A stretch of 64,000 nt of DNA from Octopus sinensis (taxonomy: Eukaryota). Below, one piece after another: positions 6,542 through 64,000 of the stretch (position 1 is the stretch's first letter; every line of letters starts with the position of its first letter). Both the position numbers and the translations under genes were made by a program. Under the pieces are notes generated by a model. It did no database searches. It was not told the origin of the DNA and saw nothing but the letters and a program-made list of their open reading frames with translations. The stretch is from positions 32,550,001 through 32,614,000 of the forward strand of contig NC_043013.1 of NCBI RefSeq assembly GCF_006345805.1. The letters are read 5' to 3'.

Positions 6542-9500
6542 TCATATTCCATCCTGAAATGATATTTCTTCTATGTCTTCATCATCCCAGATTTCTCCTG
6601 GACTCGGTATCGTTACCGGTATTCTATGAGGTATAAGTGGAGGTCGTGGCAGACTCTGAGCGTCTTTTATGCCATCGCCATCACCAAGTAGAGTATTATG
6701 GACATCTGACTCTACAGAAGCATCAACATGCTGGCTTTCACTATATGAAGCATTGTCAGAAACAACGGGATCAATTCCTGTGTATTGGCTGAAACGAACA
6801 GATTTGGACCCCATCAGGTCAGTGGGTTGCATAAAACTCTGTTGTGAGGGCAACGGGTGACCAACAGTTGTGATAGGGGCTTTTGGTTGAAAAAACCCAT
6901 TCTGCAACAAATTTTGTACCACAGGAGTTTGGTCCTGTTGTATTTCCAATCCTAATTCTGATTTTGTAGCTGTTGCATCTTCATCAGGGGTCAACCCAAC
7001 AAAGATCACTCGAGAATTTGTTTTGTTTTTATCACTAGAATATATATGCGATTGTCTAGAAGAAGAAGATTGCTGAGGTAAAACTGTTTTAGCCATTTTA
7101 TTGGAATTGTCAGGCTTCACGTTTGTTGAGGCTGCTGCAACATAATCAGAAGATGTCTCGCAAGTGGCTTGACCAATTTCTGAACTGGACAATACCCATT
7201 CTCCAGGACTTCTTTGACCCCCTGCATCAGCATCAGTGTTGCCTGGGATCATTTCAGGAATGTGAGGTGGATTCAAAGTGGTCTGCCTCATATTCAAAAT
7301 GAGTTGTAAGAGTGGATCTTTCTCAGGTGGAACTCGCTGCTGGAGAACAAATTCTCCATCACTGTAAGTGATATCAGCCGTGTCTTCGCGAGTTAACTCG
7401 TTTGAGTCCTTCAATGTGCTGGGGTTGCTGACATCGGCAAGAATACGTTTGTAGACACCATCATTGACCGTATATAGTGCTGCTTGCCCTTCACTCTGAC
7501 TCAGCAGCCACTGGCCATCAGAGAGACTCTCAAGTGCAGTATTGCTACTGCTGCTCCCTGGTGACAGTGACTCACTGCTCACCTTGTCAGATAAAGGTGA
7601 AGAATCAGTTGCAACTTCATTGTCTGTTCCAAGAGTTTCTTCTACATCGTTGTCATTGTCAGCATCAAATTTAGGTGCCAAATTTAGTCCTTCAAGTGAA
7701 GCAATTGTGAAATTTTCTCCAAGCTCTTTTACTTGTTCGCCAGTTATTTTCTCAGAAGAATCAGATTCCTCAGGTGAGAAGAGAGATCTGGTGGGGCCTT
7801 TTCCTGTCCCAGAAGTTTGGAACTGAGCAATAAAAGACGGAGGTGGGGTCGTTGTGTGTGAAGATGAAAATTGCAATGATGCTGTTGTTTGTGATGTTGT
7901 TGATGTTGTTTTGTGAGGTTTCAGAGGTTGCAGTAGTGATTGTGATGCTGGCTGTTGTTGTTGTGGTGGTGGTGGTGGTGTTTCTGGTGGTGGAGATGAT
8001 GGTGATGACTGTGATGGTAGAAATTGCGGTGGTGATTGCGATGGAGGAAATTGTGGCGGTAATGATGGCGTTATAAATTGATCTTTCTCTTCGGTGTTTG
8101 TTTCGTTCAAAGATTTCGAAGTTATTTCGACCAATTTAACGTGTCTAACAGGAGACCGGACACGAGTGTCTGGCGGAATATAGATAGATTCCATTTTGTC
8201 AATCCGCAATTTAGCAAGAGTTGCTTCCCTTCTTCTCCTCTGTACCTCTTCGACACGTTCTGCTGCAGACTGCCGTCTTGTATCACTACCCAAAACGTTC
8301 ACAGCATCTTGTGCCACGACACTTATACAGCGCTGCATTGCAGGTGCTTTAGTGTCTTGTACTTTACTTGTTGATGGTTGAATTACAAAACTACTGAACG
8401 GTTGTACGGGACTTTTCGAACTTTGCATTGAGACTGCATTTGTATTTTGCACCGCACCATCATCAGAGCGGGTTATTACAGATGTGTTAATAGGCTGCAC
8501 TATATTTTCGGTTAAGTCTTTTGCTGCGTCTTTCTTAGAATCTTTGGCAGAATTTGGACTATAAATTTTCATTGGAACTTCATCTGGATTTTCACCAGTT
8601 GTAGTTTCTTGTGCACCAGTTTTCTTTTCTTGTTCTACAGAATTTTTGTTTAAATTTAATGAATTGATTTCATTAGCGGAATAGCTTGCAGCTTCATTTA
8701 TTAATGAGTTGCTACCATCTTGATTTATCATGGTTTCAGACTCCTGAGGAATGGCAGTGTCTACAGGAACTGATTCTTTGACAGAAGTAGGCTGCAGAGG
8801 CTGAGAAATAACTGCACTTTCGGGCGTTTTATCAGTAAAATGTGAATTTTTGTCTTTCAAAACTAACTCATTTAATAATAAACTTGTTTGACAAACTGCA
8901 TCATGTTTCAATGAGGAAGATTCGTTTGGTTTTGTTTGACAAATTTCACCTTTTTCAAATTGATTAGGCGAAGCTGGTTTTGGAGATTTGTGTGAAGTCA
9001 ATACATTTAAAGCATAGTCATTTGCTAAGATTGTGCCAACTTTATCAGCAAGAATTTCCTCAATTAGTTCAGACATTATCAAAGAATCCTCAGAGACTGA
9101 AGCTTTTACTTTAGGGATACATTCTTTGTCACCTTTATTTTCTGCTGAAAAATTCTTCTTCAAATAATCAACTGCAGAATTAGCAGTTACTTGGTCGCTG
9201 GAGATTATCTGTGACAAAATTTCTTGTTCCACTAACTGAATAATTTCATTTAAATCTTCTTCTTGTTGAATTGATTCAGCATCAATAGGCATTCTTTGAG
9301 ATGTTGCTAACGTAGCCGCTATTTTATGGTTTCTAGTTAACATTAGTTCTGATGTTAAGCCAGTTAATACTTCTAACGGTTGTGGCAACACCCGATTGTT
9401 GTTATTATTATCAGCTAATGATTCACGAGTTTCTTTGGTTTTAGACTTGACAACAATTACCTCAACATCATTTTCTGCTTCAACAATATCAGAACATTCA

Positions 9501-12500
9501 CTTAAACTCTCACAGGGTATTTCCTCTTCATTATCAGTGCTTCCAGCAATCGTAACCAATTTCTCAAAAGATGTATTCAGAACATTTTTATCTTGACTGT
9601 CCGTAGTAAAATTCACATTCTTTACAACCTTGTCTTTGGTCAGTTTCCCAACAATATCAACAGATGGTAAGTCCTGCTTACTCAATACGGTTTTTTTCTT
9701 TGCAGGTTTTGCTTCATTTACAAAAGGAACAGTACAGAGGACAACATTTTCTGCAGAAACAACTTTAGGCTGGTCCTGCGGAGCAACAACTACAGAACTA
9801 CCAGGCCTAACTGTAATAGCATGAGTTAACCCAGAGTCCATTCTAGGCTCTCTTAAGGATACAGCCATATAACCTAAATGGCCTGGTACCAAACTTGAAT
9901 TCTGTAAATAGTTAGGATTATTGCTAGGTTTGCTAGCAAAGAAATATTTTTTGTCATCAGCCACGATTCCAGTACCTTTTTCAACAGTTTTCTTTACTTC
10001 TTCCACTGTTTGAACTTTGGTAGATTTTTTTTGTATTCCTTTAACATCCACCATAGCTTTTGGTTGAGTTACTTTTGTCTGTGGTTTATTTCTGATGTGT
10101 AAGTAAGGCTCCCGAACAGTAGTTCTTTTATTTTGGTAAGTAGCTTTACCAAATACTTGCGTAAGATATTCTTGGTCTTGGTACAAGACATTTAGGTTTT
10201 TATTTGAACTTTGAGGGGCTTTTTCCTTTGTTTTAACAATAACTTTTGGTTGTTTCTGTCTGGAACCACTTAAATCTTCAGAGTCTTTTTTCTTCCCTAA
10301 TTTATTCACTTTGGTGGCAGGATTTGAGCAAGAAAGTTTATTGAAAGTAGCTTCTTCCATTGAGAGTTCTTTCTGAATATCTATCTGCATTTTGGCAATA
10401 CATTGGTCAACTTTTCGTTTCATTTGGTAAGTTTGAGATACTGGGCTGCTTTGATAAAGATTATCCACAATATTATAAACAGCATCCTTCTTGTAATCTC
10501 GTTCTAAATTCTTTAAGTTTTCTTCCAGAAACATCCGACTAGTCTGAGCACGTTGAAGAATTTCTTGCCCAGCAACAAGTTCAGCTGAAGGAGCAGTTGG
10601 TTTTAGGTCGGCATAAATTTTATCTGATGTGAAAAGTTGAGTCTTCAGAGGCGAGTCTAGAAGATATTTCTCAAGAGGAGCTGCTGACTGTGAAGAAGTA
10701 GACCATTTCTTAGAATTACCGTTTTGATTTTGAATTTTATTAAACTCCTTTTCATCGTGCTGTAAATCGGGAGAAGAAGAAATAACATAACTAGTGTTCA
10801 GAATTGCTGGTGCAGGAACAGACTGTTTCTTAGGAATGCGTTTAGCTTTGGAAGTTTCTCGGACTGCATACGGTTCCTTAGAATAAGGATTAGAGGTAAA
10901 AGTTTTTAGATAAGAGTATTTCAAAGGGAGCTCTTTAGCAGATTGTTTCTCAGTTACAGATGTTGGTTTCTGTATATATTTGTTGATTTCTTTAATAACA
11001 AGTTTTTCTTCGTCTACATTCGATTGATATTTCTTGTTTCTATTGGGTCTAGAATTCTGGAATTTGGATGTGGAACTCACCGAACTCACAGTTTTGTTTG
11101 GCTTGGAAGTAGATTTGCTTTCCTTGCCATTCACAATGTTTGTCTTTACATTTGATGCCTTGCGGGTTGTGCTGAGAGGATTATTTGAATTTACTTTGGG
11201 TTTTATGGAAGGAGCAGATGTATCTTTAGAATTACCTCTCAATGCACTTTTTGATGATGACTTCTCAATATGATGTTCCTTTTTTGGATTTTTAGCATGT
11301 TTATCTTCAGGAGCTACAAAAAGGGGTTTAGGGAAACTTCTTACATCTTTATCTGTACTGATAGAAAAATCTAGTGATTCTAAAGAATCAGATTCTTTAG
11401 ACATTTCAATATCATTTTTTGAATGTTGCACATTTTTAGATCTGTAATGTAATGGTTCCATATTCTCTTCATTCTCTTCAATTTTTTGTTGAACATTGTC
11501 AGGAACATGACCAAACATTTTCTCAAAACTTTTTGCGACATTTAGAAAGTTGGTTTGCATACCAAACATCTGCTTTTGCAAAAGTTCTAAAGAATTCATT
11601 CGATCCTTTGTCACTTGGCTAAGTTGACTCTCCAGCTTCTGGAGCTTTCCTTCCTTCTCCATTTCATGTTTCTGTAGAAATATCTGCTGTTCTAAAGAAT
11701 TCATCTTATCCAATAGAGTCATCAACTGAGCCTCTAATCTGTTATGCGACGCCAATAAAGGATGAGCTGAAAACGCAGCGGCAGTGGCCGCGGCAACGGT
11801 GCTGAGTGTTTTTTGCATGGAAGCAGTTCCACGACAAGGACAGCAATCCTTCTGCTCTGGTTCCTTATCTGGATTTGTGCTTTCTTTCTGTCTGACAGCA
11901 GGAATTTCATCTTCTCCAACTGATTTATCTTCCAATTGCTCTACAGCTGCTTTCTCTTCAACAGGGGATGTTTTACTGGCAGAAATATCATTTGGTAAAT
12001 CCGAATTAATTACTTCTAAATCTAACGCATTTGCAATTACTTTTTCAGGAATTTGGTTTGGAGGATCAACGGTGTTTTCCTCTTCTTTATTATAGCAACA
12101 TTCAGGTTCCACTTCCTCAGTTAACTGGTTATCAAGCTGATCCGAATTCAAAGCAGGAACCATTTCCTCTTCAAAATTATGTTGCAATTGTAGCTCAAAA
12201 CTTTCAGGCTCTTTTGTGATAACGGTAATTATTTCTGGTTGTTTGTGTTGCACTGATGGTACAGATATTTCTGGATTGTTATCTGAACGGATGTTTTCTT
12301 TGAACACAGAGAAATTCTCCAAGCTACCAAGATCAGCAGGCTTTGGGAAAGATGGCGTAGTCAGTTTCGAAGCTGTTTTTCTGTGAGGACTGTGTTTTTC
12401 AACAACAACTTGCTTCCTCATACCATTACACAGAGAATGACACGAAAACTTACTGGTCAGTGTACCTGGAACTTTGGTTAAACTTCTGCCAACCTGTGTT

Positions 12501-12601
12501 ACAACTGACTGAGTACCAAGTCTTGCAAAAGCTGATTTTGTAGAAAGGGATGACACTGAACTAAGGTCTAAGTTACGTCCATTATCATTGCTCAGGAACA
12601 A
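6542..12601 (-). CDS. KIAA0586: TALPID3 (KIAA0586) centriolar/ciliogenesis protein homologue, single giant coding exon; true start uncertain (first in-frame ATG at 12421)
   Basis: 2019-codon ORF. [16 protein letters not shown]..LEAQL resembles human [65 protein letters not shown] resembles the conserved TALPID3 core [27 protein letters not shown]. Coiled-coil stretches and acidic S[DP]G[EQ] motifs near the C-terminus. The frame is open up to 12691; the track's start at 12601 is TTG. Confidence 0.88.
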   Translation of the reverse strand: [2019 protein letters not shown]

Positions 12602-15088: not shown

Positions 15089-15486
15089 ATTGCGACCATG
15101 CTGGGGCACCGTTTTGAAAGGGTTTTTTTTTAGTCGACCGAATTGTTTTTTAAAGCCTGTTACTTATTCTATCGGTCACTTATGCCGAACCGTTAAGTTA
15201 CGTGGGTGTAAACAAATCAGTGCCAATGATAGGAGGACAAATACAAAGGCATAGATAAACACACACACACACACACACACAGAGGCAGATGGATGGATGG
15301 ACAGACGGATGGACGGATAGACGGAGGGACGGATGGATGGATGGACAGACGGACGGATAGACAGAGGGACGGATGGACATATAGACAGACAGACAGATAG
15401 ATAGATTAAAAAACATGCTTTTTTTTTTTTTTAGTTTCAGCTCAGAGCTGCAGCCATGCTGATGCATCGCCGTTTGAAAGATCACA

Positions 15487-15578
15487 CGCCCGCAGAGGGA
15501 TTCGAACCCGCGACCCTCAGATTACTTCTAAGGTTGACCTATAAAAGTCTGATGCTCTACCGACTGAGCTATGCGGGC
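15487..15578 (-). tRNA. tRNA-Lys-TTT: tRNA-Lys (anticodon UUU) with a 19-nt canonical intron (15523-15541)
   Basis: Minus strand reads GCCCGCA TA GCTC AGTCGGTA GAGC A TCAGA CT TTT A [TAGGTCAACCTTAGAAGTA] A TCTGA GGGTC GCGGG TTCGAAT CCCTC TGCGGGC G. Perfect 7-bp acceptor stem, intact D and anticodon stems, A and B boxes, G73 discriminator, intron between positions 37 and 38. One C50-U64 mismatch in the T stem. Confidence 0.95.
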
Positions 15579-16168
15579 GGACATGCTTATGCATGTTTGC
15601 ATATATATGTATGATGTATGTGTACTTGTATATGTATATGTATATATGTGCATGTATATATGCATATGTGAGAGAGATTTTGTGTGTGTGTGTGTGTGTG
15701 CTTGCTTGTAGCCTTAATTAGACATCGCACTGGCTGTGAATGAGCATCATCTTCAGTGCAAACAAGGTTGTCTGTTTCCAGTCTTCTGCAGAAAAAAACA
15801 TGCCTGGGCATGGAAAAAATATTGCCTTATTTGGAAACAGGTGAGGGTTGATGACAGGAAAGGCACCTGCCTGTAGAAAATCTACTTGAATCAAATTCCA
15901 TCAGATCCACGCAAACATGGAAGAGTGGACGTTAAATGGTGATGATGATGATGATGATCAGAATTGTCATCAAATTCATTGCATTCCTATGGGCTGACTG
16001 CATGTGTTGTGTTTACCAAGACTCCTCAAACCCTGTGCTTCTCAACCATTTTTTGTCCTAATTTTGATACCTATTTAATTCAAATCAATCCCCATAGTCA
16101 TTCAAGATTTAAAATATTTTATTCTATTCTTAGAATTACATGTTATAAAGAATTTTATTAAAATAATA

Positions 16169-16213: not shown

Positions 16214-17143
16214 CCCAAAGAGAGCGAATAATGCAGATGTTGACAAAGCCTTGACCCATCAATGGCTAATGGCCTCTGGCTTAAAATCTGAAACAGAAGG
16301 GTTTATCATAGCAGCTCAAGATCAATGCCTACCAACAAGAAACTACCAGGCCAACATATTAAAGAATGGCAGTAGCCCAACATGTCATGTATGTCAACAA
16401 CAAAATGAAGCCATTGATCATGTTGTCTCCAAGTGCAGTCTTCTAGCACCTACAGAGTATCTCAACAGGCATGATAGAGCTGCACAATATATTCACTGGG
16501 TAATCTGCAAAAACCTGGATTTGCCCCATGAAAAAAACTGGTGGGAACACAAACCACCTCCAGTGCTTGAAAATGACCACATCTCGCTCCTCTGGAACTT
16601 CCCTATTCAAACGGACAGAAAGATAGATGCAAATAGGCCAGACATCATATTGAAAGACTTCAGACAAAGAACATGCCTCCTCATTGATATGACTGTCCCA
16701 ATCGATATAAACGTATCTGTCAAGACCTACCAAAAACTGAGCAAATATAAAGATCTTGAAATAGAAATCAGCAAAATGTGGAACCTGAAAACTAAAACAA
16801 TACCTGTTGTCATAGGTGCCCTGGGAATGATAGCGAAAGGGGCTGATTGCTACCTAACTTAGATACCAGGAAACCACAAAATGGCAGAAATTCAAAAGAT
16901 AGTGCTCATGGGAACTGCTCATATCCTATGCAAAATACTTTCTATGTAATCTCAGAGTTTAAAACAAACATAATTTTCGTTTTTTTTTTTTTTTGGACAT
17001 TCACTAGTACAACACCAAAAAAAAACCCCAAATATATGGCACACTAGGCATAACAACATGAACTTTCAACCTGTTATCTCTTGAGGTCTCTGGGTGAGAC
17101 CTGGAGCCAACTTGTACAAATATAAAGCAAAAGTCAAACATAG
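16211..17143 (+). mobile_element. 5'-truncated Dong/R4-clade non-LTR retrotransposon (CCHC finger + restriction-like endonuclease + 3' UTR)
   Basis: ORF 16251-16862: C..C........H....C finger, RHD motif, LLWNFPIQTD..I.ANRPDII..D....CLLID and K..KY.DL (PD-(D/E)xK REL domain). A premature TAG at 16860 is followed by in-frame IPGNHKMAEIQKIVLMGTAHIL. (AAT)n flanks both ends. Confidence 0.9.
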
Positions 17144-17154
17144 AATAATAATAA

Positions 17155-17575
17155 TAATCTCTTTTATCTCTTTTACTTGTTTCAGTCATTTGACTGCAGC
17201 CATGCTGGAGCACTGCCTATAGTCGGGCAAATCGACCCCAGGACTTATTCTTTGGAAGCCTAGTACTTATTTTATGGGTCTCTTTTGCCAAACTGCTAAG
17301 TGACAGGGATGTAAACACACCACCATCAGTTGTCAAGTGATGTTGGGGGGACAAACACAGACACACAAACATAGACACACACATACGTGTATATATATAT
17401 TTATATGACAGGCTTCTTTCAGTTTCCGTCTACTAAATCCACTCACAAGGCTTTGGTTGGCCTGAGGCTATAGTAGAAGACACTTGCCCAAGGTGCCATG
17501 CAATGGGAATGTACCCAGAACCATGTGGTTAGTAAGCAAGCTACTTACCACACAGCCACTCCTGTGCCTTATGAT
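17155..17575 (-). mobile_element. tRNA-derived SINE (family B, OR-like)
   Basis: The minus strand has the head GTGGCTGTGTGGTAAGTAGCTTGCTTAC..ATGGTTC and the tail ..CAGCATGGCTGCAGTCAAATGACTGAAACAAGTAAAAG. Copies at 22894-23290, 44950-45300, ~36930-37120 and (+) 39220-39490. Confidence 0.85.
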
Positions 17576-17603
17576 AATAATAATAATAATAATAATAATG
17601 ATG

Positions 17604-17650
<47 letters not shown>

Positions 17651-22201: not shown

Positions 22202-24895
22202 AACTATATTATCTACTGTCTTTTCCTTTTAAGATGGTAGAATGTAATTTTAGACAGATTTTGCAGCTAATTCTAGCAGATAGGGTCACATGGTGGGTGT
22301 TCAGTCTATCATTTGAAATGTTTTAATCGAACTCAGAAAGCGTAAATGTCTTTCGAACTCTAGAACCTAATTTAAAGTAACTTGAAAGTATAATTAATAA
22401 AAGAAAAGAAAACAAAAGAACTTGAGAAACCAGCTTTATGAGTTCAAGGGCTCAAGAAAAAAAAATGGCTTTCAGAAATATTTCCTAAGTGAGCAGATTC
22501 ACCATAAACTATGCAGACTTTTACTGCATCCAAAAAAAATTTAATTTTTCAAACAAAATTAAATTTCAAAGGAAATTTATAAACTTTTACTTTATAGAAA
22601 ATGGATGGAAAGTGAAATAGGGAGGGCTTCTAACAATGCAGAAAGATTTAAAAACCTTTATATTTCAGTCACAAAGACCTAACTTCAGAAGAATACAGTC
22701 AAATAAATGCATTTTTACATAGGTTTTATTATTTTAGACTTATACCTACAGTGAGAGAGTTACTGCTGCTGCTGACTCAAACACCAAAATAAGAAAATCT
22801 ATGTAAATACATATTTCTTTGTATTCCATTCAAGAAAGGTATTTTGCACCTGAAATATAAAGGTTGGAAAGACTTCCTTTTGTATCCCTCTACTCTTTAC
22901 TCTTTTACTAGTTTCGGTCATTTGACTGTGGCCATGCTGGAGCACCGCCTTTAGTCGAGCAAATCGACCCCAGGACTTATTATTTGGAAGCCTACTACTT
23001 ATTCTATCAGTCTCTTTTGCCAAACTGCTAAGTAACGGGGACGTAAACACACCACAATCGATTGTCAAGCGATGTTGGGGGGACAAACACAGACATACAA
23101 ACATATACAGACACATACATATACGACAGGCTTCTTTCAGTTTCCGTCTGCCAAATCCACTCACAAGGCTTTGGTTGGCCCGGGGCTATAGTAGAAGACA
23201 CTTGCCCAAGGTGCCACGCAATGGGAATGAACCCAGAACCATGTGGTTGGTAAGCAAGCTACTTACCACACAGCCACTCCTGCACCTATGTAAAAAATTT
23301 TTTTTAAATATAACACATAGTGGAAAACTGTTTTCCTACCATGTCTTATAATAATAAAAATTAATAATTTCTATTAAAAGAAACTTTATTTCTGTATTAT
23401 GTATATTCATATACTAAGGTTAGGCAAATTTCATAGAGTGGAGCAATTTAGGCCTTACTAACAATAACTCTGAGCACCTTTTCAAACTCCACCTGTCTAA
23501 CACCCATGGACATGCTTACAAAGTCAGAAAACAGCACAGCTCTCATGACTTTCGGAAACATATTTTTACACTAAGAGTTGCTGAAGCATGGAACAAACAG
23601 TTGTTAGTTGTCGGTGCACTGCATCCTTCAAAACTTCCATGCTTCCTGAGATTCGCCAACACTACACCTGATTTTTCTCCCCCCCCCATACACACGCAAG
23701 CATGTATCTGACTCATACACTTCACTTTCCAGACATTTGTACATTATTGCATATACTTTATACGCACTTTTGACAAGTTGTGGTGCACCTGAGCACTGTA
23801 TACAGTAATTTCATAATATTATATATCATAATAATAATAATAATAATAAAAACATTGTGTACAGTGCTCAGGTGCACTACAACTCATCTAAACTGTATTT
23901 ATATACTCAGGTGTAGTTTCGACAGATTTCGGAAAGCATGAGGGCCTTAAAGGATGCAGTGTCATGCAGTGTTATATTTAATGTTTGGCAAATTGGGACA
24001 TGAATACATATAATACAGAAATGAATTTTTTTGTTAACAGAGATTCTTAATTTTTATGATTTTCTCCTCATTATTATAATAAGACATGGTAGGAAAACAA
24101 TTTTCCACCATGTGTAATATTTTTTAAGAAATTTACGGGAGGGTACAAAGGAAGTCTTTCCTAAAGGGTTTTTTAAAAACTTTCTGCATTGTTCGAAGCT
24201 TTCCTTATTTCTCATTTCATTCATTTTCAACTTCTGTACTACAATGCTTCAAGCGAACTACAACGCTCTTATTTCTCTTAACAGTTTCAAAATACGACTG
24301 AAATTTCCAGGGGAACTGTCAGATGCAATTATACTGCAAGGGAGACAACACATGGGTTATTTATTTTCCGGGTGAGTGAGGTTACCAACAAAAAATTCAT
24401 ATTAAAATATGAAACAGTGATTGTTTAACCTAAAGAGTAATTGATTTATAAATGTTCTATATCATTCGTGAAATATTTGTAGAAAGAAATTAATTAGCAT
24501 CTGCATTATATGTCCTCCTTAAATATATTGCAGAATTAAATATTTTGAATTAATTGATGGAGTTACGATGTGTTTATTGCTTTTAATATTTTAACTATTT
24601 AATGAATTGCTCTAAATATTTAAATATTTTCTTCAAGAATTAATATAAATATTTAAACAATACAGAAATATTAAATTTCTTTTGTTTTCTTTTCTTTTAT
24701 TAATTATACTTTCAAGTTACTTTAAATTAGGTTCTAGAGTTCGAAAGACATTTACGCTTTCTGAGTTCGATTAAAACATTTCAAATGATAGACTGAATAC
24801 CCACCATGTGACCCTATCTGCTAGAATTAGCTACAAAATCTGTCTAAAATTACATCCTACCATCTTAAAAGGAAAAGACAGTAAATAATATAGTT
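22202..24895. repeat. Nested inverted-repeat (foldback) structure centred on an (AAT)n at ~23830
   Basis: Outer arms 22202-22420 / 24677-24895 (219 bp, 4 mismatches by eye). Inner arm pairs at ~22598-22657/24167-24228, ~22866-22890/24138-24161, ~23295-23410/23998-24130, ~23615-23670/23907-23968 and ~23772-23810/23850-23890. Confidence 0.9.
24285..24371 (+). CDS. Candidate 87-nt in-frame exon
   Basis: tttctcttaacag acceptor and consensus CGG|GTGAGT donor. Open in phase 0 (FQNTTEISRGTVRCNYTARETTHGLFIFR). Confidence 0.35.
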
Positions 24896-37500: not shown

Positions 37501-38084
37501 AAATGCAAATGTATCTACCACCTTTTGTAATAGCTATTTTTTCTAATTTTGGCACAAGCCCAACAATTTTGAGGAAACGGGGCTGGTCAATTGACTGGTA
37601 CTTAATTTCATCATCCCTGAAAGGATGAAAGGCAAAGTTGACCTCAGCAGGATTTGAACTAAAAAAGTAAATAGCCAGAAGAAACACCACTGAGCATTTT
37701 CCTCTGATGTGTTAAGAATTCTGTCATACCTTCAGCAATAAGAATTCTTTCTATTATAGTCACAAGGCCTGAAATTTTGGCAGAGGGGTCTTGTCAATTA
37801 CATCAACCTCAGTACTCAATTGTTACTTATCTGTATCAACCCCAAAAGGGGCGGATGGTAAAGTTCACCTCAGCTGAATTTGAACTCAGAATGTAAAGCC
37901 AGAGGGAATCCCGCTAAGCATCTTATTCCAGTTCCTAGTTTTGGATTGTTGACATTTCTCACTTGCAAGCTCTTCCATATATTCTAGCGATAGAGGACTC
38001 TATACTAAGCAGTTTAGAGTCCAAATCAGTGATAATTGGTAAACCTATGATAATAAGTGGTCAAACATTGAAAATCCAGCACTC

Positions 38085-38640
38085 ATCATCATCATTTAAC
38101 GCCCGCTTTCCATGCTGGCATGGGTTGGACAGTTTGACTGAAGGCTGGCATGCCAGAAGTCTGCACCAGGCTCCAATCCGATCTGGCAAAGTTTCTACAG
38201 CTGGGTGCCCTTCTTAACACCAACCACTCCGAGAGTGTAGTGGGTGCTTTGTATGTGCCAGTGAGACGGCACTGGCATCAACCACCCTTGAATGGTGCTT
38301 TTTACGTGCCATTGGCACAGGAGCTAGTCAGGCAGCACTAGCAACGATCATGCTTGAATGGTGCTTTTTTACATGCCACCAGCAAGGGTACCAATCAGGC
38401 AGTACTGTCATTGGCCACGACGCCGACTTCACTTGCCTCAACAGGTCTTTGCAGGCACAGTTTATTGCCCAATGACTGAAGGGTACTCTTAAATGGGCTG
38501 GTTATGCTGCACTGGCATAGGCCATGGTTACGGTCTCACTTGGCTTGCCAGGTCTTCTGAAGCACAGCATATCTCCAAAGATCTCAGTCACCTGTCATCG
38601 CCTTGGTGAGGCTATGCTTTTGAAACTGTGTATGAAGACT
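38085..38640 (-). mobile_element. RTE-tail-related SINE/LINE fragment (family C, (ATG)n tail)
   Basis: catcatcatcatttaacg[t/c]ccgctttccatgct[a/g]gcatgggttggac signature. Copies at 41695-42060, ~42700-42870, 44760-44920, 51060-51230, 58900-59218, 59352-59910, 62080-62240 and 63500-63745. Confidence 0.8.
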
Positions 38641-41044
38641 GCACTATTTAATATATTGTTTCCTTTTTTTAAACAGTCCAGTGCAATTTGGCTGTCATTT
38701 CTAGTTTATCAAGGAACCACACAGAGACTTATTCTTAAAAGTAGAGAATTACTATACAGATATCTGACATAAATATGTAAGATGTGATACTAATAATAAT
38801 CTACATCATTTTTGTCCACAGAAGGTAAGGGTGCACCTTTGATGCAGGTCTGAAGAAGTGCAACTCTAATGTTTAAAACCACAGATATTACATAAGAGTT
38901 TTGTGTTGACTGGCATTGAAAGCAGAGTTGGAACAGAGACAATTGTAGCTGATCCTTAAAGATAAGGGATTAAAGTCTTCCATTGTCTTCCTATTTGGAT
39001 TATATTTTACTTTTTGCTAAACTCACACAACCTGGATTTTCTCCATTTGAAGAATTCTGATAGGCTGGAATCTGACAGTGTAGATAGCCTAAAGATCAGG
39101 TTGAGTGCAACATTGGAAATACCCTATCTTTCTACCCTCCCAGAGCCTCATGTATGTATATGCATATATATATATACATACATACATACACACACACATA
39201 CGTGTGTATATATATATACAGAAGTGGCTATGTGGTACCCTGGACAAGTGTCTTCTACTATAGCCTTGGGCCGACCAAAGACTTGTGAGTGAAACTGAAA
39301 GAAGCTTGTCGTATTTATGTGTATGAGTGTGTTTATCCCTCAACATCGTTTGACAACCAATGCTGGTGTGTTTACGTCCCCATAACTTAGCAGTTCGGCA
39401 AAAGAGACTAGGCTAACAAAGAATAAGTCCTGGGGTCAATTTGTTCGACTAAGGGTGGTGCTCCAGCAAGTGACTGAAACAAGAATATATATATATATAT
39501 ATATATTTATATACAAATACATGCATATATATATATTTAATGCATCTCGAAATGGGGAATGGATGGACAGCCGACAACTAATGAAGGGTCATTCTTTGTA
39601 TAACTTGTCCCTTTTTCTCTCGTTATTTGTGTATTTAATGTTGGTGACGTCCTGTACCCATATGGGCATATTATTGTAATTATTATATATAAACATTATT
39701 AATTATAAGGAATATTATGAAGTTGCACAGCATTATATTTAATTCTTTTAATATATATACATCTTTACATAGACCTGCACATGTTTCAGCTGCACTGATT
39801 AGAAACTGTTGTGCAATTGCAACCCTACTATGTGTGTGTGTGTGTTTGTATTCGTTCCCCACATTCCACTGCTTGACAATTGGTGTTGGTTTGTTTATGT
39901 CTGGTAATTTAATGGTTTGGAAAAGGAGATTGATAGAATAAGTACTGGACTTCTAAAAGAAGGTAAGTACTGAGTTTGATTGGTAGACTGATCCTTTCGC
40001 AGTGGTGCCCCAGCATGGCTGCAGTCCAATGATTAAAACAAGTATACAATAATGAATGTAATGGGTGACTTAATCAATAAAATTCTTGAGAAACTGTTTC
40101 GTGGCTTTAAATATACATGGCTTAGTGGGTAAAGCTTTCAGCTCACAATACTGATGTCATGGGTTCAATTCCTAGGCCAGTTGTTGCATTGTGCCTTTGA
40201 GCAAAGCACTTCATTTCGCATTGCATCAGTCCACTCAGCTGTAAAGAAAGTACCAGTGCTGTTGCCTGTGCAGCCCTCTCTACCTTTGGTGGTTATGTTC
40301 AAGGATGCTGGAGACAAAGAGGATATCCATGTCTGCTCAGGCACCTAAAACAACTAACAAAGATATGGTACATACAACTAAACCATACTTGCTCACAAGT
40401 GAAGACTAGGTGTAATGATCTAAGCTCAAATTCCACCTTGCTGATTTCTATCAACATCAGAGTAATGCAAGTCTAAGTTCTAGTCTAACCCTTAAATTAC
40501 TCTGTCGAATGTAAAGATTATTTATTCACATTGTTTTCAATTAATCATGCATTATCTTGTAAGAGATGAGAATTCAATGATGTGATTGTTTATTTTCTGA
40601 ATGGCATTGTAGAGTTGATGTGAAAGACACCAAAATCAATTTTTTCTGAATATACATTGCTGAAATCTAGCTGCTTCTTTTATGCCATCAAATATGGTAA
40701 ATAAAAATAAAGAGCCCATTTCCAAATAAATTCTAAAATGTTAAATATTTCTTCCATCCAGTGGAGAAAAGGCGGTGAGCTGGCAGAAATGTTAGCCCGC
40801 TGGGTGAAATGCTCAGTGGTATTTCGTCTGCTGTTATGTTCCGAGTTCAAATTCCACCAAAGTCGACTATGCCTTTCATCCTTTCGGGGTTGATAAATTA
40901 AGTACAGCTACGCACCGGGGTTGATAAATTAAGTACAGCTACGCACCGGGGTCGATGTAACTGACTTAATCCCTTTGTCTGTCCCCTTGTGGGTAATAAA
41001 GAAATAACAAACTATAGTAGTTGATAGCTTCTGTTACCTAGGTG

Positions 41045-41640: not shown

Positions 41641-44600
41641 GTCATTGGGTGATATGCTGTGCTTGTTAAGACCTGTCAAGCTGAGTGAAAGAGGGTTATC
41701 ATCATCATCATTTAACGTCCGCTTTCCATGCTAGCATGGGTTGGACGGTTCAACTGGGGTCTGGGGAGCCCGAAGGCTGCACCAGGCCAGTCAGATCTGG
41801 CAGTGTTTCTACAGCTGGATGCCCTTCCTAACGCCAACCACTCCGAGAGTGTAGTGGGTGTTTTTATGTGCCACCGACACAAGTGCCAGATGAGGCTGGC
41901 GAACGGCCACGATCGGATGGTGTTTGTTACGTGCCCACAGCACGGAGGCCAGTCGATGCGGTACTGGCTACGGCCATGTTCGGATGGTTTTCTTGTGTGC
42001 CACCGGCACTGGTACCACAAAGATACAAATTCCATTGATGTTCATCTATTTTGATTTTTTGGCAGGAGACATTTTGTTGGTTTAGTTGGCATTGCTGACT
42101 TATCTGCTATCAGGCATTTTAAAGTTCCTCTCATTCTGTTTATGTAAGAGTATGTTGTGTTCAATTAATAAATTACAATCTCTCTTTTGTTCTGTTGTGA
42201 GTATTTCTTTGCAAGCATGTGTGTTGGCCCCAGAGCAAAAACAAGCTTATGTACCAAATGTCTCTTCCTGGTATTAAAAGGTTTTGACAAAAAGAAACAA
42301 AACAAAGGACCCATTAGTCCCTGAAATATCACTTCTAAACTTGAAATAACCTGCACTGCATGCATGTGTGGTTAAGGAGCTTGCGTCCTTACATGGTTTC
42401 AGGTTCAGTCCTACTGCATGCCACCTTGGACTGTCTTCTACAGCCTCAGTGTTACCAAAGCTTTTAGAGTAGATTTGCTAAACAGGAACATGTGTATGTG
42501 TCTCCTTGTCTTGACATCATGCAACTGTTGTGTCACTCTCATATAAACTATGTCAATCGTTTCTAATCCATTAAAACATTTCTGGTCATGGGGAAAATTT
42601 GCTTGAAAAGAGGTGAGGGCTGGTGATGAAAATAGCATCTGGTTGCAGAAAATCTGCCACAACGAATCTCTTGACCCACACAAACACGGAAAATCCTCAT
42701 CCCTGTTTAAATGTCCATTTTCCATGCTGGCAAGACAGAGTACTGCACCAGGCCCCAATTGGATGTTTGGTATGGTTTCTGCAATTGGATGCCCTTCCGG
42801 AAACCCAACAACTTTATAAAGTCTACTGGGTTGCTTTTACATGGTGTTGGCATGTGAAAATGGATGTTAAAATATTTACAATGATAAAAATGTAAGGCCT
42901 ACTTCCACATGATGCTGGTATTGTATATTTATCTCTGACAATGTTGTTAGAACTGGAGATTCTCTCCCACCTTGTAAAAATCCTAAACATCGGAACTATC
43001 AAATTTAAATCCTTTAGCATTCAGATTTATTCCCAATGCTTTGAATTAATCAAGCATTATCTCAGTTTCAAGATTTTGATATGATTGCTCATATTTAGAA
43101 TGGCATTGTAGGACAGGATGATAGGCCAGATCTGGCCTGTGACTACAAAACAGAATATCTGGATTGGATAGGGTTGCTTTAAAAGGTTAATAGGGTAACA
43201 TTACCACAAGTGTCATGCAACATCCTGTTCAAGAATTACTTTAGAAGCAGAGAACTTCTATAAGTCAAAACGTAACCTTAGGTTTAAAAGAAAAAATGGA
43301 CACTATTTTAAATGTTCCTAAATCCCAGGACAACATGCTCATGGAATATATAAAACTGGATAACAAGTAAGTTAAAGAGCTTCAACATGTTAAACTGCTA
43401 GAAATAGCAGCCAATTTCCTTAAGCCACATCTAAAAAACTAAAAATTGTATAGTCCTAGATATACTAAGTCTGCAAAATAAAATGAGAAACTTAAACATC
43501 GTTTAAACCCTAAGAAAGCGTTTTGTATTCAGATAGAAAAATGAATTGTGACTCGGCCCTTAAAAAAGAAAAAAATATCCCTTTAGCATTTAAATTATTC
43601 AAACCAGACCCAAAGATTCAAGTTATGTGTTGAGAGTGACCCAATTCAACTTTTCACTCTAAAATGGCACAATTATTCATGATTAATTTTCTTTTCAATT
43701 CTTGGCACATGGCCCAAAACTTTTGGGGAGGGAGCCAGTTGATTAGATCAACCCCAGTAAGCAACTAGTACTTAATCTATTGATCCCGAAAGGGTGAAAG
43801 GAAAAGTCAACCTCAGCAGAATGTGAACTGAGAATGTAATGACATGAAATACTGCCAAGCATTTCGCCCGGTGTGCTAACATTTCTGCCAGCTCGCCACC
43901 CTATGCATGATTAATTATAAAAGCTGACTAAATAAGCATTACATTCCACAATAATCTGAATACTAAATGGTTAAAGATAAGAAACTCAACCTTTTTTGTG
44001 ACCATATTTTTAACAAGAAAAATCCAGCAGTAAGCATTTAGTAAAATAAGTTTGCTCAAACTACCATGTTTAACCCTTTAGTATTTAAACCGGCCATAAT
44101 ATTTAATCTGTTTTATGTTCAAACTGACCAGATCCAGGCTCTCACACCTTCCCTACAATGTTATTCTACATTAAGTAATTACACCATCAAGATCTTGAAG
44201 ATATGAGATAATGCATGATTAATTCAAATCAATGGGAATCAATAAGCATTATGTTTGATTGAATTGTCTGAACACTAAAGGGTTAAAGTGTCTGGTCTTA
44301 AGGTTACCAACAAGACCTCATAAAAAGTACAGCAATATTCTAAATTAGATCAAGGTATGCAAGATAAACTGCTTACAAATGTTTCTTAAATCTGCTAAAA
44401 ACAGCAATTATATAAATTTAATGACAACCAACTTTGGATTTTTTTGTTTCTCTAAACATGGTGAGCATCAATTTAGATGTGGAGTCTGTAGCATACACCG
44501 ATTAATTATTACTGTACAATTTGCCCAGGTGACCTACATCAATGCTGCTTGAAAGATCAGACTTGACCTGTGTACATCGAACTGCATTTATCTCGGAGGC

Positions 44601-47600
44601 TTTGGTGCCAAAAATAGTGATAAATGAACCATCTCCATGCATGTTGTACATGGAATGGTAGATTCAATGACACCAAACTTGTGGCCCACAGCAGTGAAGC
44701 TTCAATTGTTGCATATTTTCATCATCTGCAGTGGTGCCATGTGAAAAGAACCCATGCAAAATGCAACGAGTACACCCTGTAAAATGGTTGGTATTACGAA
44801 GAGCATCCAGCAGTAGAAACCATGTTAAAACAGACAATTGGGGCTAGGGGCAGCTCTGGCTTGCTAGCTCCTGTCAAATTGTCCAACCAATGCTAGCATG
44901 GAAAACAGATGTCAAATGATGATCCATCTTTTTCTGTAGTGAATATAACCTTTTACTTTTCTATTTGTTTCAGTTGACTGTGGCCATGCTGGAGCACCAC
45001 CTTTAGTCAAACAAATCTACCCCAGGACCTGTTCTTTGTAAGCCTTGTACTTATTCTAATTGTCTCTTTTGCCAACAGCTAAGTTACAGGTATGTAAACA
45101 CACCAGAATTGGTTGTCAAGCAATGTTAGGGGGACAAACACACAACATACATATAAATATACGATGTGCTTCTTTTAGTTTCCATCAACCAAATCCATTC
45201 TGAAGGCTTTGGTCAGCCCAAGGTGCCATGCAGTGGGACTGAACCCAGAACCCTGTGGTTGGTAAGCAAGCTATTTTCCACACAGCCCCTCCTGTGCCTG
45301 CAATTTGTTTGCATTATTTGTGAGAATGAGGTACATTTGTATTTTTTTCTGTATATTGGTCCTGTGTTAATGGGTGTGAGTTTGTAAATGCAAATAAAAG
45401 GCAAACAGCTTTGCAGCTGTCATGTAAATCTAAGTTATAGTGCATTCTGGATGGATTGATGCACTTTTTTGCAGAATCTTTGACTGTGATAGGGATAAAA
45501 TGGTTCATAACTGAACATACTGTTCAGATATCTTGGATTGGTAATAAAATGAGGTTACATGTGTAACAAAAGCCAGCCAACCAACCATGACATGCAAGTA
45601 GAAGTTACAAATATTAAATAACTGATCATGTTATCAAAAAGGTTAACCCATGCACCCTATCCTTTTGTGACCATATTTCTAATAAGAATATCCTGCAAGT
45701 AAGCTTTAGTGAAATGAATTTGATGTGACGTTTACCCATTAAAATATAAAACATTCTTTTTGGTGCAAGTATTCTTGATTTTAGGAACCACAATTTCTCT
45801 GAACATGAATAACTGTTACAAACATGGACAATAAAACGAGACAGACATTCCTGGGTACACACTATTGTAACATGTCTCAGTCTCATCTGAAGAAAGAAAG
45901 AACAGTTTTTATGTACAACTTCCTACAAGTCACCCACAAGTTGTGGTCCCCAACTATCACCTGTCTCAGAGGCCCTGATCCCACAACATAGAAATATAGT
46001 GATGCATGATTCAAAGGAAATTTGGTTGATATTTCTAGCAATTTAAAGAAGCTACAATGGTGACTCCATTGCAGGGTCATTCCTTTCTAAACTATATCAA
46101 TGTTTAGAGCGCAATCTCATGATACTTGTCTACAGAAATGAGTTATAGTATTTGGTTCTCAAAAGAATCACTTATGATTTTGATATGTTGTTTAAAGAAT
46201 TAAGATATAAAAAAAACAAAAACAAATTGACACCTGTCTACCGTAATAAGGCAGGAAGAATAAGAAACAGAAATTTTAAAATAGAAAACAGTTATAGGAA
46301 TTTCACTGCACTATTCAAACTATATCTTCGGAGGTAAATACTTTTCTCTCAAATTAATCTAAGTGTTTTGTCCCAATAAAATTCAGCAATTTATGTACAA
46401 AATGAGCAGCATTTCTGATTGTCTTATGGTTACATTAATACAACTGACATTGGACAGTTCAGTTTCCTGTTCTGATATGAAGTCTGAAAACAAGCCCATG
46501 AGCAAAACCAATAAATGCAACAAACTAGTCAACAGTGAAGTGAATGGTAGTACCAGGTAGACAGACAAATCCAACAAGGCACCTTCTATGTCATCAATTG
46601 ACTTGATAGAAATTGCCAACTAATTGTATTGGTGTATAATTGTTTAGTGTAGTCTGACGTAATATTAAATAAAATCCTAAATACACTGCTTATAAAAAGC
46701 TGGGATAATCGAAGCTGAAACAACCATACATCTGTTGAATCAGTTAAACAAGCAGGAAAAAGTTAAGCAAACTGGAAAATCCAGTTACTGTGTTAAAACC
46801 TGGTGATAAATGTATAATCTAACAAGTAAACTGCCCAGATTTCTATTGCTTTTTAATAGAAAGTTTTGGAAGAGTTTAGTAAAACATCTAATTTTATATT
46901 ATCAGTAAGCTGATTTGACAACTGAAATCTTACTGTTAAAAAGCAAGAGTTAATTTATAGAGATTTGCTACAGATGCACAAGCCATATGAATAATGATCT
47001 TGAAATAAAGAGCCTCTACTTGAGAATTCAAACTGCTAGAAATGACAGCAACGTCTTGAAATTGAATACAAATGTCTTATAAAAAAAATGCAGTGGACAA
47101 TGTAATACTAGACACAAGATGATTGTAGCCTGTAATACTAGTAGTACAGACCTACTCAACCAATGTGTTATTGAACAAAGGTTATAAAAGTCTGGGAAAA
47201 TGTAGCCCCTAAGTAGCACAGCTGCCCAAATTCTGAAAATGAGTTACCCAGACCAAATTTTAATTGCAGTTCCATCTGCTTTGAACATGCTGACCTTTTG
47301 CATAAGCCCCAAGTCAGTTCTGATCAAAAGCAGTCCTAAGTTATGCAGGTCAACAACTAAGCAATGATGCAGTTTCAGTCACATCATTCATTGGCTTATG
47401 GCTTGGGCTGAAATTCATCTAAAACTTTCCTGCAGATTACTAAAACTGAAATGCTATTCCAACAGCAACAGAAAGCAATTTGATAACCAAAGCAGTGGAC
47501 AATAGAGTAGTAGGACTAGAAGACATAAGAAATTTAGCAAGAAGCAGTGTAGGAATCCTGTCAATGACCTTTGGCTAAGAGATGCAAACAATTTACAGTA

Positions 47601-63480: not shown

Positions 63481-64000
63481 GTACAACAAATAACATCATC
63501 ATCATTGTAGTTGTTTAATGTCAGCTTTCATATTGGCATGAGTTAGACAGCTTGATGGGAATTGGTAAGCTGGAGAGTTGCACCAGGTTCCAATCTGAAT
63601 TTGGCTTAGTTTCTACAGTTGGATGTCCTTCCAAATGCCAACCCCTCTGAGAGTGTAGTGTGTGCCTTTTCCACATCACCGGCACAGGTGCTTTTATGTG
63701 TCATCGACACGGGTGCTTTTATGCGTCACCGGCACGGGTGCTTTCTTATCTTGCAGTAGCTACCATCTCCTACTAGGCTTACTAGTTTTCCTTAGTATTC
63801 CAGTTTATCAATACTAAATGCCTTTTTTTCTGCCTGCTGTAGTATCATTATACTGGTACCATTCTGCAAAGTTCTAATAACCATTCTTTTCCATCTTGTG
63901 GTGATCAGTTTGGAAAGCCTTGCCTTTCTTCAGTGCTTGTCTCACTTTCCATCTGATCTCATCAGACAGACCAGTAGTAAATAGACCTCTTCTAATACAG

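What the first reader, a model, noticed from the sequence alone, without database searches (positions are those of the whole stretch)
15487..15578. Intron-containing tRNA-Lys(UUU) in an animal, with a fully formed anticodon-intron helix
Seen: a 19-nt intron at the canonical 37/38 site. Its 3' part (UAGAAG) can pair over 6 bp with C32-U33-U34-U35-U36-A37, including the C32:G antepenultimate A-I pair, and AGG-UCAA-CCU caps the stem. That complementarity argues for a selected TSEN substrate rather than a random insertion. Known: animal tRNA introns are mostly in Tyr-GUA, Ile-UAU and Leu-CAA (plus Arg-UCU in vertebrates), whereas Lys-UUU introns are familiar from fungi. Inference: a lineage-specific intron gain or unusual retention, possibly producing a tRNA intronic circular RNA or enabling an intron-dependent modification. 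I cannot confirm from memory whether it has already been reported in cephalopods.
Basis: partly seen in the sequence, partly recalled or inferred. Interest (0 to 1): 0.72.

Follow-up and report, generated by a model that had tools for sequence, protein, structure and literature searches.

The report
Retrocopied intron-bearing octopus lysine tRNA
The intron-containing tRNA-Lys(UUU) is real and looks spliceable, but this copy is a recent retrotransposed copy of an unspliced tRNA precursor fused to a SINE tail, and the same intron type occurs widely in environmental DNA, including contigs with animal-type genes.

Summary
A 92-nt tRNA-Lys(UUU) lies on the minus strand at 15578..15487 (Rfam 60.4 bits). 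It has a 19-nt intron at 37/38, a C32:G(-3) anticodon-intron pair and a 6-bp helix (chance about 0.005).

The window is Octopus sinensis, about 2.9 kb upstream of the large TALPID3 exon. The locus is not a native tRNA gene. The tRNA is followed by a 10-nt trailer ending in TTT, a 44-nt tail shared with octopus SINEs, and A14. The whole unit is flanked by an 8-bp duplication (AAGCATGT).

O. bimaculoides has the empty site with one AAGCATGT. O. vulgaris has the identical element. The first T4 terminator lies at +74, whereas 77 of 79 comparable environmental genes have one within about 10 nt.

Best reading: a LINE-mediated chimeric retrocopy of an unspliced pre-tRNA-Lys(UUU), that is, a possible nascent SINE.

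A metagenome scan found at least 134 intron-bearing Lys(UUU) genes, and every distinct intron has G at -3. Some lie beside animal-type genes. A cephalopod-specific intron gain is therefore not supported. Published GtRNAdb-based summaries call such introns essentially absent in Metazoa. Expression, splicing and copy number are untested.

The parts
15581..15588 (-). Left copy of the 8-bp target-site duplication, AAGCATGT
   Evidence: The same 8-mer follows the poly(A). O. bimaculoides has a single copy at the orthologous site.
15579..15580 (-). CC dinucleotide between the duplication and tRNA position 1: a remnant of the pre-tRNA 5' leader, or untemplated bases (inferred)
   Evidence: Read from the sequence.
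15542..15578 (-). tRNA-Lys(UUU) 5' exon, positions 1-37, including the A box TAGCTCAGTCGG
   Evidence: ARAGORN; Rfam 60.4 bits; coordinates.
15523..15541 (-). 19-nt intron TAGGTCAACCTTAGAAGTA at 37/38, with G at -3 pairing with C32
15487..15522 (-). tRNA-Lys(UUU) 3' exon, positions 38-73, with B box GGTTCGAATCC, the C50:U64 mismatch and discriminator G; no CCA
15477..15486 (-). 10-nt stretch TGTGATCTTT: probably the pre-tRNA 3' trailer ending in the U-run of the source gene's terminator (inferred)
   Evidence: Sequence. Comparable environmental genes have T4+ within about 10 nt of the 3' end.
15433..15476 (-). 44-nt retroposon tail CAAACGGCGATGCATCAGCATGGCTGCAGCTCTGAGCTGAAACT
   Evidence: A 34-nt stretch matches at 97% a non-orthologous site in O. 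bimaculoides, L001 21282-21249 (E 1.6e-11). It aligns with the 3' ends of the abundant CORE-type SINE copies in the window.
15419..15432 (-). Poly(A) tail: A14 here, A17 in O. vulgaris
15413..15420 (-). Right copy of the target-site duplication, (AA)GCATGT; its two A's merge with the poly(A)
15408..15413 (-). T6 run in the flank: the first possible Pol III terminator for this copy, starting at +74

Best explanation
The locus is a LINE-mediated chimeric retrocopy of an unspliced, end-unprocessed pre-tRNA-Lys(UUU), fused to the 3' tail of an octopus SINE/LINE and to a poly(A) tract.

Proposed course (steps marked shown or inferred):
1. (Inferred) A native octopus tRNA-Lys(UUU) gene with a canonical 19-nt intron is transcribed by Pol III. 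The nuclear primary transcript keeps a short leader, the intron and a trailer ending in UUU.
2. [quoted passage not shown] Alternatively, an earlier event of this kind, or a SINE insertion into a tRNA terminator, created a master gene, and this locus is its progeny.
3. (Shown) The product inserted at ..GCAT/AAGCATGT/GTTTT.. about 2.9 kb upstream of the large TALPID3 exon and duplicated 8 bp. This happened after the split from the O. bimaculoides lineage and before the O. vulgaris/O. sinensis split.

The copy keeps intact A and B boxes and a foldable, TSEN-competent precursor structure. It could therefore be transcribed through the tail to the flanking T6 and behave as a nascent SINE or an extra tRNA gene, but this was not tested. 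As a sequence fossil, it shows that octopus makes an intron-containing pre-tRNA-Lys(UUU).
For: Structure of the element:
- The order is TSD-CC-tRNA(92 nt)-TGTGATCTTT-44-nt tail-A14-TSD.
- There is no CCA and the intron is present, so the template was a nuclear precursor.
- The duplication begins with AA. The nicked bottom strand would then end in TT-3'OH and could anneal to poly(A) (reasoned from the sequence).

Presence and absence across species:
- O. bimaculoides has no tRNA within 10 kb either side of TALPID3.
- Its sequence ACTGCATAAGCATGTGTTTTCTAATCTATCT matches the O. sinensis left flank up to AAGCATGT and the right flank from AAGCATGT onward, with one copy of the 8-mer.
- The flanking blocks are colinear at 80-88% identity.
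- O. vulgaris carries the element at the orthologous site, 146/146 nt identical, with A17.

The tail:
- It recurs at a non-orthologous O. bimaculoides site (34 nt, 97%, E 1.6e-11).
- It aligns with the tails of a roughly 430-nt CORE-type SINE that has a different tRNA-like head (OR1 of octopus is a CORE-SINE, PMC4824008).

Terminator: the first T4 starts at +74, beyond the poly(A). In comparison, 77 of 79 GCCCGG-type environmental intron-bearing Lys(UUU) genes have T4+ within about 10 nt of the 3' end.

Isolation: it is the only tRNA-like sequence in 64 kb.

Precedents: tRNA-head capture by template switching from a SINE RNA, flanked by a TSD (PittSINE, PMC5729268); retropseudogenes from unprocessed nuclear tRNAs (PMC5322556); LINE-1 chimeras with small RNAs.
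Against: - Only about 25 nt of the left flank can be aligned to O. bimaculoides. Further upstream the two species differ by nested repeats and microsatellites, so the left boundary rests on a 13-nt identity plus the TSD logic.
- No outgroup was available to polarise insertion against precise deletion.
- No second copy of the tRNA+tail element was seen, so family status is unknown.
- The 10-nt 'trailer' shows weak similarity to SINE sequence upstream of the tail, so the exact tRNA/tail junction is uncertain.
- A 2-nt leader is short for a full primary transcript.
- No RNA data were available.
Confidence: 0.8

Rival explanations
1. A native, ordinary intron-containing tRNA-Lys(UUU) gene at its ancestral locus, transcribed by Pol III and spliced by TSEN.
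For: Near-perfect cloverleaf at 60.4 bits. Consensus A and B boxes. Canonical intron with an A-I pair. Identical in O. vulgaris.
Against: Poly(A), a SINE tail and an 8-bp duplication surround it. The site is empty in O. bimaculoides. There is no T4 terminator until +74, unlike 77 of 79 comparable genes. It is isolated, not in a tRNA cluster. The 0/146 differences from O. vulgaris are not significant at 1.7% flank divergence (expected about 2.5).
Confidence: 0.07
2. One member of an established multi-copy SINE family whose head is an intron-bearing tRNA-Lys(UUU), possibly the tRNA-Lys-derived 'OK' family reported in octopus in 1994. On this reading it is not a one-off chimera.
For: It has SINE architecture: a Pol III head, a tail shared with other retroposons, an A-tail and a TSD. 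Cephalopod genomes hold thousands of tRNA-derived loci (PMC6962438). Three tRNA-derived SINE families were described in octopus (Ohshima and Okada 1994, cited in PMC9223172; the attribution of one family to tRNA-Lys is from memory).
Against: No second copy was found in the 64-kb window or in the ~26-kb O. bimaculoides locus, and the ~26-kb O. vulgaris locus holds only the orthologous copy. The head shows no decay relative to a functional tRNA. The published consensus could not be read.
Confidence: 0.3
3. A decaying tRNA pseudogene in which a random 19-nt insertion happens to lie in the anticodon loop, so that it is not a real intron.
For: The copy is a retrocopy and need not be under selection. 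There is a T-stem mismatch.
Against: The insertion is exactly at 37/38 with G at -3 and a 6-bp helix (P = 0.005). All 103 distinct environmental Lys(UUU) introns also have G at -3. The acceptor differences from the environmental genes are compensatory, read from the sequences. The C50:U64 mismatch is shared by independent genes.
Confidence: 0.03
4. The element is ancestral and was precisely deleted in the O. bimaculoides lineage.
For: No outgroup was examined. The region upstream of the site has been rearranged between the species.
Against: O. bimaculoides keeps exactly one copy of the 8-mer that flanks the element in O. sinensis. That is the signature of a pre-insertion site. Precise excision of retroposons is rare (general knowledge).
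Confidence: 0.04

Closest known systems
Canonical eukaryotic tRNA introns cut by the tRNA splicing endonuclease (animals: Tyr-GUA, Ile-UAU, Leu-CAA, Arg-UCU; fungi also Lys-UUU)
   Same: Position 37/38, short length, an anticodon-intron helix with the conserved proximal pair (C32:G-3), and a 3' splice site in a 3-nt bulge in the predicted fold.
   Different: In animals the Lys-UUU isoacceptor is described as essentially intron-free. Splicing was not shown here. This copy is a retrocopy rather than a native gene.
SINE birth by head capture through template switching (PittSINE: tRNA-Asp head on a TguSINE1/CR1 tail; PMC5729268)
   Same: [quoted passage not shown]
   Different: The head here is an unspliced precursor that keeps its intron. 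Amplification into a family was not shown.
Retropseudogenes of unprocessed nuclear tRNAs and small-RNA/LINE chimeras in mammals (tailless retropseudogenes; U6/L1 and tRNA/L1 chimeras)
   Same: Nuclear precursor RNAs used as reverse-transcription templates by LINE machinery, with TSDs.
   Different: Those are usually truncated, tailless or antisense to the LINE part. This one is full length, in sense orientation, with a SINE tail and poly(A), and it is in a mollusc.
Octopus tRNA-derived SINEs (OK, OR1, OR2; Ohshima and Okada 1994)
   Same: Same host genus. The tail is related to the abundant CORE-type (OR1-like) SINE in the window.

Membership tests
Canonical TSEN-type tRNA intron | Intron between nucleotides 37 and 38 of a tRNA that otherwise folds as a cloverleaf | tested here: met
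   Rfam places a 20-nt insert after the anticodon loop and scores the body at 60.4 bits. Parsed by hand and folded.
Canonical TSEN-type tRNA intron | Anticodon-intron (A-I) base pair between nucleotide 32 and intron nucleotide -3 | tested here: met
   C32:G(-3) is present. G at -3 is invariant in 103 distinct environmental Lys(UUU) introns. The requirement is described in PMC10485636.
Canonical TSEN-type tRNA intron | 3' splice site in a short bulge next to the A-I pair | tested here: met
   The constrained MFE places U(-2), A(-1) and A38 in a 3-nt bulge. This is a prediction only.
Canonical TSEN-type tRNA intron | The intron is actually excised, giving a spliced tRNA and a linear or circular intron | not testable with these tools
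   No RNA data were available.
Native Pol III tRNA gene | Internal A and B box promoter elements | tested here: met
   TAGCTCAGTCGG and GGTTCGAATCC, read against the textbook consensus.
Native Pol III tRNA gene | A run of four or more T within about 10-20 nt downstream | tested here: not met
   Only TTT at +8 to +10; the first T4 starts at +74. 77 of 79 comparable environmental genes have T4+ within about 10 nt of the 3' end.
Native Pol III tRNA gene | Presence at the orthologous locus in related species | tested here: not met
   Present in O. vulgaris. Absent from O. bimaculoides, which has an empty site.
LINE-mobilised retrocopy / SINE-like retroposon | 3' A-rich tail and flanking target-site duplication | tested here: met
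   A14 here and A17 in O. vulgaris. AAGCATGT lies on both sides and once in O. bimaculoides.
LINE-mobilised retrocopy / SINE-like retroposon | 3' tail shared with other retroposons of the same genome | tested here: met
   34 nt at 97% to L001 21282-21249. Alignment A1 with four SINE copies.
LINE-mobilised retrocopy / SINE-like retroposon | Many dispersed copies, needed for SINE family status | tested here: inconclusive
   No second copy in the 64-kb window or the ~26-kb O. bimaculoides locus, and only the orthologous copy in the ~26-kb O. vulgaris locus. Whole genomes could not be searched.
Octopus OK SINE family | Sequence identity with the published consensus | not testable with these tools
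   The 1994 paper and its sequences are not held. A look-up of the related 1993 squid SINE paper (PMC46908) failed.

The most novel reading that the evidence does not exclude
The Lys(UUU) intron is not an octopus oddity but a conserved, overlooked fifth family of animal tRNA introns. On this reading it is present in many marine invertebrates and was missed because tRNA catalogues are dominated by vertebrates, insects and nematodes, and it would be maintained for an intron-dependent step in maturation of this heavily modified tRNA. In octopus the unspliced precursor has in addition been captured as the head of a nascent SINE.
Probability: 0.35. Interest if true: 0.6.

Novelty: new member of a known kind. 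Interest (0 to 1): 0.42.

Why it matters
There are two modest points.

First, the retrocopy preserves the sequence of an unspliced octopus pre-tRNA-Lys(UUU). More than 130 environmental genes share an invariant A-I pair, and some sit beside animal-type genes. Together these suggest that the published rule (animal tRNA introns essentially limited to Tyr, Ile, Leu and Arg) reflects sampling bias. That can be tested directly by running tRNAscan-SE on mollusc, annelid and other invertebrate genomes.

Second, the locus is a clean, datable example of a tRNA precursor joined to a SINE tail. This is the step thought to create new SINE families, and here the head still contains its intron.

For annotation, tRNA predictions in cephalopod genomes should be screened for poly(A), duplications and missing terminators before they are counted as genes.

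Tried and rejected
- I used the open antisense reading frame across the element as a protein query to reach other octopus copies in public assemblies. No candidate was found.
- I used a concatenated query (CDI, LRR and GT92 ORFs from three metagenome contigs) to obtain organism names. It gave one weak lamprey Slit hit and no taxonomic anchor.
- I searched the window and the O. bimaculoides locus for more copies of the element or its tail. Only one tail-only copy was found.
- I tested whether the tail belongs to the second abundant repeat, here called 'SINE-X', that lies upstream. It does not: six or more SINE-X copies end before the tail.
- I tested for purifying selection by comparing O. sinensis with O. 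vulgaris. There are 0/146 differences against 1.7% in the flanks, which is not significant.
- I scanned bacterial and archaeal genomes for the octopus-type T arm. There were no hits. The general pattern found one contaminated MAG contig.
- Literature searches for Lys(UUU) introns in molluscs or other invertebrates, and for the metagenome accession prefixes, found nothing relevant.
- The unconstrained MFE is not the cloverleaf. I treated this as a known limit of single-sequence folding, not as evidence against the tRNA.

Full report
**1. The observation**

ARAGORN reports a single tRNA in the window: tRNA-Lys with anticodon ttt at 15486-15579 on the minus strand. Rfam's tRNA model matches 15578..15487 at 60.4 bits (gathering score 29, E 1.4e-10) with a 20-nt insertion after the anticodon loop. 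It is the only family above threshold. At E<=1 no other tRNA-like sequence appears in 64 kb.

The minus strand reads GCCCGCATAGCTCAGTCGGTAGAGCATCAGACTTTTA / TAGGTCAACCTTAGAAGTA / ATCTGAGGGTCGCGGGTTCGAATCCCTCTGCGGGCG. The gene is on the minus strand.

- six pairs between C32-A37 and intron nucleotides -3 to -8;
- a 3-nt bulge holding the 3' splice site;
- an AGG/UCAA/CCU cap.

The unconstrained MFE (-36.6 kcal/mol, z = -4.1) is a different fold. Shuffled introns give a 6-bp helix in this register with P = 0.005. The arm energy (-9.0 kcal/mol) is reached by 3% of intron shuffles. According to a recent review of the splicing endonuclease, only the proximal anticodon-intron pair is conserved and critical (PMC10485636). 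Here that pair is C32:G(-3).

**2. Organism and setting**

The 2019-aa ORF at 6542-12601 (minus) is TALPID3. It is 99% identical to the Octopus sinensis protein and 90% to that of O. bimaculoides. The O. sinensis chromosome segment L002 is 100% identical to the window. The tRNA lies about 2.9 kb upstream of this large exon, in the same orientation. It sits among microsatellites and interspersed repeats.

**3. The locus is a retrocopy**

Reading 5' to 3' on the minus strand, the element is:
- AAGCATGT (15588-15581)
- CC
- tRNA with intron (15578-15487)
- TGTGATCTTT (15486-15477)
- a 44-nt stretch CAAACGG...CTGAAACT (15476-15433)
- A14 (15432-15419)
- GCATGT, which with the last two A's repeats AAGCATGT
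- TTTTTT in the flank

The orthologous O. bimaculoides locus (L001) has no tRNA within 10 kb on either side of TALPID3. The surrounding blocks are colinear at 80-88% identity. L001 contains ACTGCATAAGCATGTGTTTTCTAATCTATCT. This matches the O. sinensis left flank up to AAGCATGT, including 13 identical bases next to the junction. It matches the right flank from AAGCATGT onward, and it holds only one copy of the 8-mer. That is the pattern of an empty pre-insertion site.

O. vulgaris (L123, reached through a cluster member) has the element at the orthologous position. All 146 nt of tRNA plus trailer/tail are identical, and the A-run is A17. The insertion therefore post-dates the split from the O. 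bimaculoides lineage and pre-dates the O. vulgaris/O. sinensis split. Flank divergence between the latter two is 1.7%, so 0/146 differences says nothing about constraint.

**4. The tail**

The 44-nt stretch is not unique sequence:
- Thirty-four of its bases recur at 97% identity at a non-orthologous place in O. bimaculoides (L001 21282-21249, E 1.6e-11).
- It aligns with the 3' ends of four copies of an abundant SINE of about 430 nt in the window (alignment A1).
- That SINE has a different tRNA-like head and a CORE-like domain. The octopus OR1 family is a known CORE-SINE (PMC4824008).
- A second abundant repeat upstream of the tRNA does not carry this tail.

The element is thus a tRNA-Lys precursor head joined to a retroposon tail and a poly(A).

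**5. Terminator test**

In a set of environmental intron-bearing Lys(UUU) genes (section 7), 77 of 79 with the same GCCCGG-type body have a T4+ run within about 10 nt of the 3' end. The octopus copy has only TTT at +8 to +10, and its first T4 starts at +74, beyond the poly(A) and the duplication. The TTT is where the source gene's terminator would have been. This fits a primary transcript that ended in UUU. The junction remains uncertain, because the 10-nt stretch also shows weak similarity to SINE sequence.

**6. Mechanism**

*Shown:* the composite structure, the duplication, the presence/absence pattern and the tail homology.

*Inferred:*
- An intron-containing pre-tRNA-Lys(UUU), lacking CCA and so nuclear and unprocessed, served as a reverse-transcription template.
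- It was joined to the tail by template switching during target-primed reverse transcription of a polyadenylated SINE/LINE RNA.
- Alternatively, an earlier fusion of that kind produced a master copy, of which this locus is progeny.

Precedents:
- PittSINE, a tRNA head captured onto an existing SINE tail with a flanking duplication (PMC5729268).
- Retropseudogenes from unprocessed nuclear tRNAs (PMC5322556).
- LINE-1 chimeras with small RNAs.

The duplication starts with AA, so the nicked strand would end in TT and could prime on poly(A). The copy keeps consensus A and B boxes. It could be transcribed to the flanking T6, but nothing here tests that.

**7. Is the intron special to cephalopods?**

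These hold 134 genes with 103 distinct introns of 10-34 nt, most commonly 18-20 nt. Every distinct intron has G at -3, against about 23% in shuffles. These are genuine splicing substrates, and the octopus intron conforms.

Eighty-five genes have the body GCCCGG.TAGCTCAGTCGGTAGAGCATCAGACTTTTA. Three of them (L095, L119, L120) share the octopus T arm with its C50:U64 mismatch and differ from octopus at 5 of 73 positions.

Some contigs carry animal-type genes:
- An N-terminal Cip/Kip CDK-inhibitor domain lies next to the tRNA in four related contigs (Pfam CDI confirmed for two of them, L118 and L015; L054 and L116 by eye; best PDB match human p27).
- An LRRNT-LRR protein is present on another contig.
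- A contig filed under a Rubritalea MAG is a 1054-bp tandem array of Lys(UUU)+intron, Tyr(GUA)+intron and Glu(CUC). This is evidently eukaryotic contamination.

I could not name the host organisms. My recollection that several contig series come from gutless-worm holobionts is unverified.

Other contigs are gene-dense and low in GC, with topoisomerase IA, MutS, DUF5764 and large tRNA arrays. They look like giant viruses.

**8. Comparison with the literature**

Two recent papers based on GtRNAdb state that animal tRNA introns are prevalent in Tyr-GUA, Ile-UAU, Leu-CAA and Arg-UCU and essentially absent elsewhere (PMC12168002; bioRxiv 10.1101/2025.06.17.660180). Searches of the held library found no report of Lys(UUU) introns in molluscs or other invertebrates. 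Cephalopod genomes are known to hold thousands of tRNA-derived loci, many thought to be SINEs (PMC6962438). Tests of membership in the splicing-intron, native-gene, retrocopy and OK-family classes are listed row by row in the membership table.

**9. Verdict**

- The intron is canonical and is in a cephalopod.
- The locus is a young chimeric retrocopy, not a native gene.
- The intron type appears widespread rather than gained in cephalopods.

It is a new member of known kinds (canonical tRNA intron; tRNA-headed retroposon). It carries a moderately interesting implication for how completely animal tRNA introns have been catalogued.

The main open points are:
- copy number in the genome;
- the structure of the native octopus Lys(UUU) genes;
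- expression and splicing;
- the identity of the environmental hosts.

Noticed in passing
L123 about 7184-7216 (O. vulgaris orthologous locus): A 33-nt stutter of partial copies of the tRNA 5' end (AGCCCGCATAGCTCA / GCCCGCATAGC / CGCATAGCTCC) lies between the left duplication and the tRNA. It is absent in O. sinensis. It could be an assembly artefact or a real microduplication.
   Followed up: partly
L020, L026, L042, L043, L051, L065, L072, L073, L077, L113 (metagenome contigs): Low-GC, gene-dense contigs with topoisomerase IA, MutS, DUF5764 and a dynamin-like GTPase, plus arrays of up to about 20 tRNA genes. They also carry intron-bearing tRNA-Lys(UUU) with the same anticodon arm. They look like giant viruses of protists.
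   Followed up: partly
L124/L125 (CBDBEG010000035.1, filed as a Rubritalea sp. MAG): A 14-kb contig made of a 1054-bp tandem repeat that encodes tRNA-Lys(UUU) with a 19-nt intron, tRNA-Tyr(GUA) with an intron and tRNA-Glu(CUC). This looks like eukaryotic (animal-type) contamination in a bacterial genome bin.
   Followed up: partly
L012 (OFDO01002803.1): A vertebrate-like tRNA-Lys(UUU) body with a 22-nt insert at 37/38 lies on a 1.6-kb, 32% GC contig whose 325-aa ORF is bacterial-type (PRA-CH plus MraW/RsmH methyltransferase). It may be a chimeric assembly, or an unexplained case.
   Followed up: no
window 17150-17630, 22880-23360, 44940-45410; partial copy about 39990-40070: Copies of an abundant SINE of about 430 nt, with a tRNA-like head (AGGCACAGGAGTGGCTGTGTGGTAAG...), a CORE-like domain (CCTTGGGCAAGT...) and the tail ...CAGCATGGCCGCAGTCAAATGACTGAAAC. 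It is probably the OR1-type CORE-SINE of octopus.
   Followed up: partly
window 15720-15960, 38083-38263, 41698-41889, 59022-59219, 59354-59567, 63495-63686: A second interspersed repeat (...CCATGCTGGCATGGGTTGGACGG...GATGCCCTTCCT...). The two copies at 59022-59219 and 59354-59567 are in inverted orientation. It accounts for several of the longer spurious ORFs.
   Followed up: no
L001 7455-7690 (O. bimaculoides): O. bimaculoides has its own reverse-oriented tRNA-derived SINE, inserted 25 bp from the empty site and absent in O. sinensis. Each lineage has thus gained a different retroposon here.
   Followed up: partly
window 16251-16862 (+) and 23777-23883: A LINE reverse-transcriptase C-terminal fragment (weak zf-RVT match) lies about 700 bp from the tRNA. 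A long, near-perfect hairpin scores below threshold against several miRNA families and is probably an inverted-repeat element.
   Followed up: no
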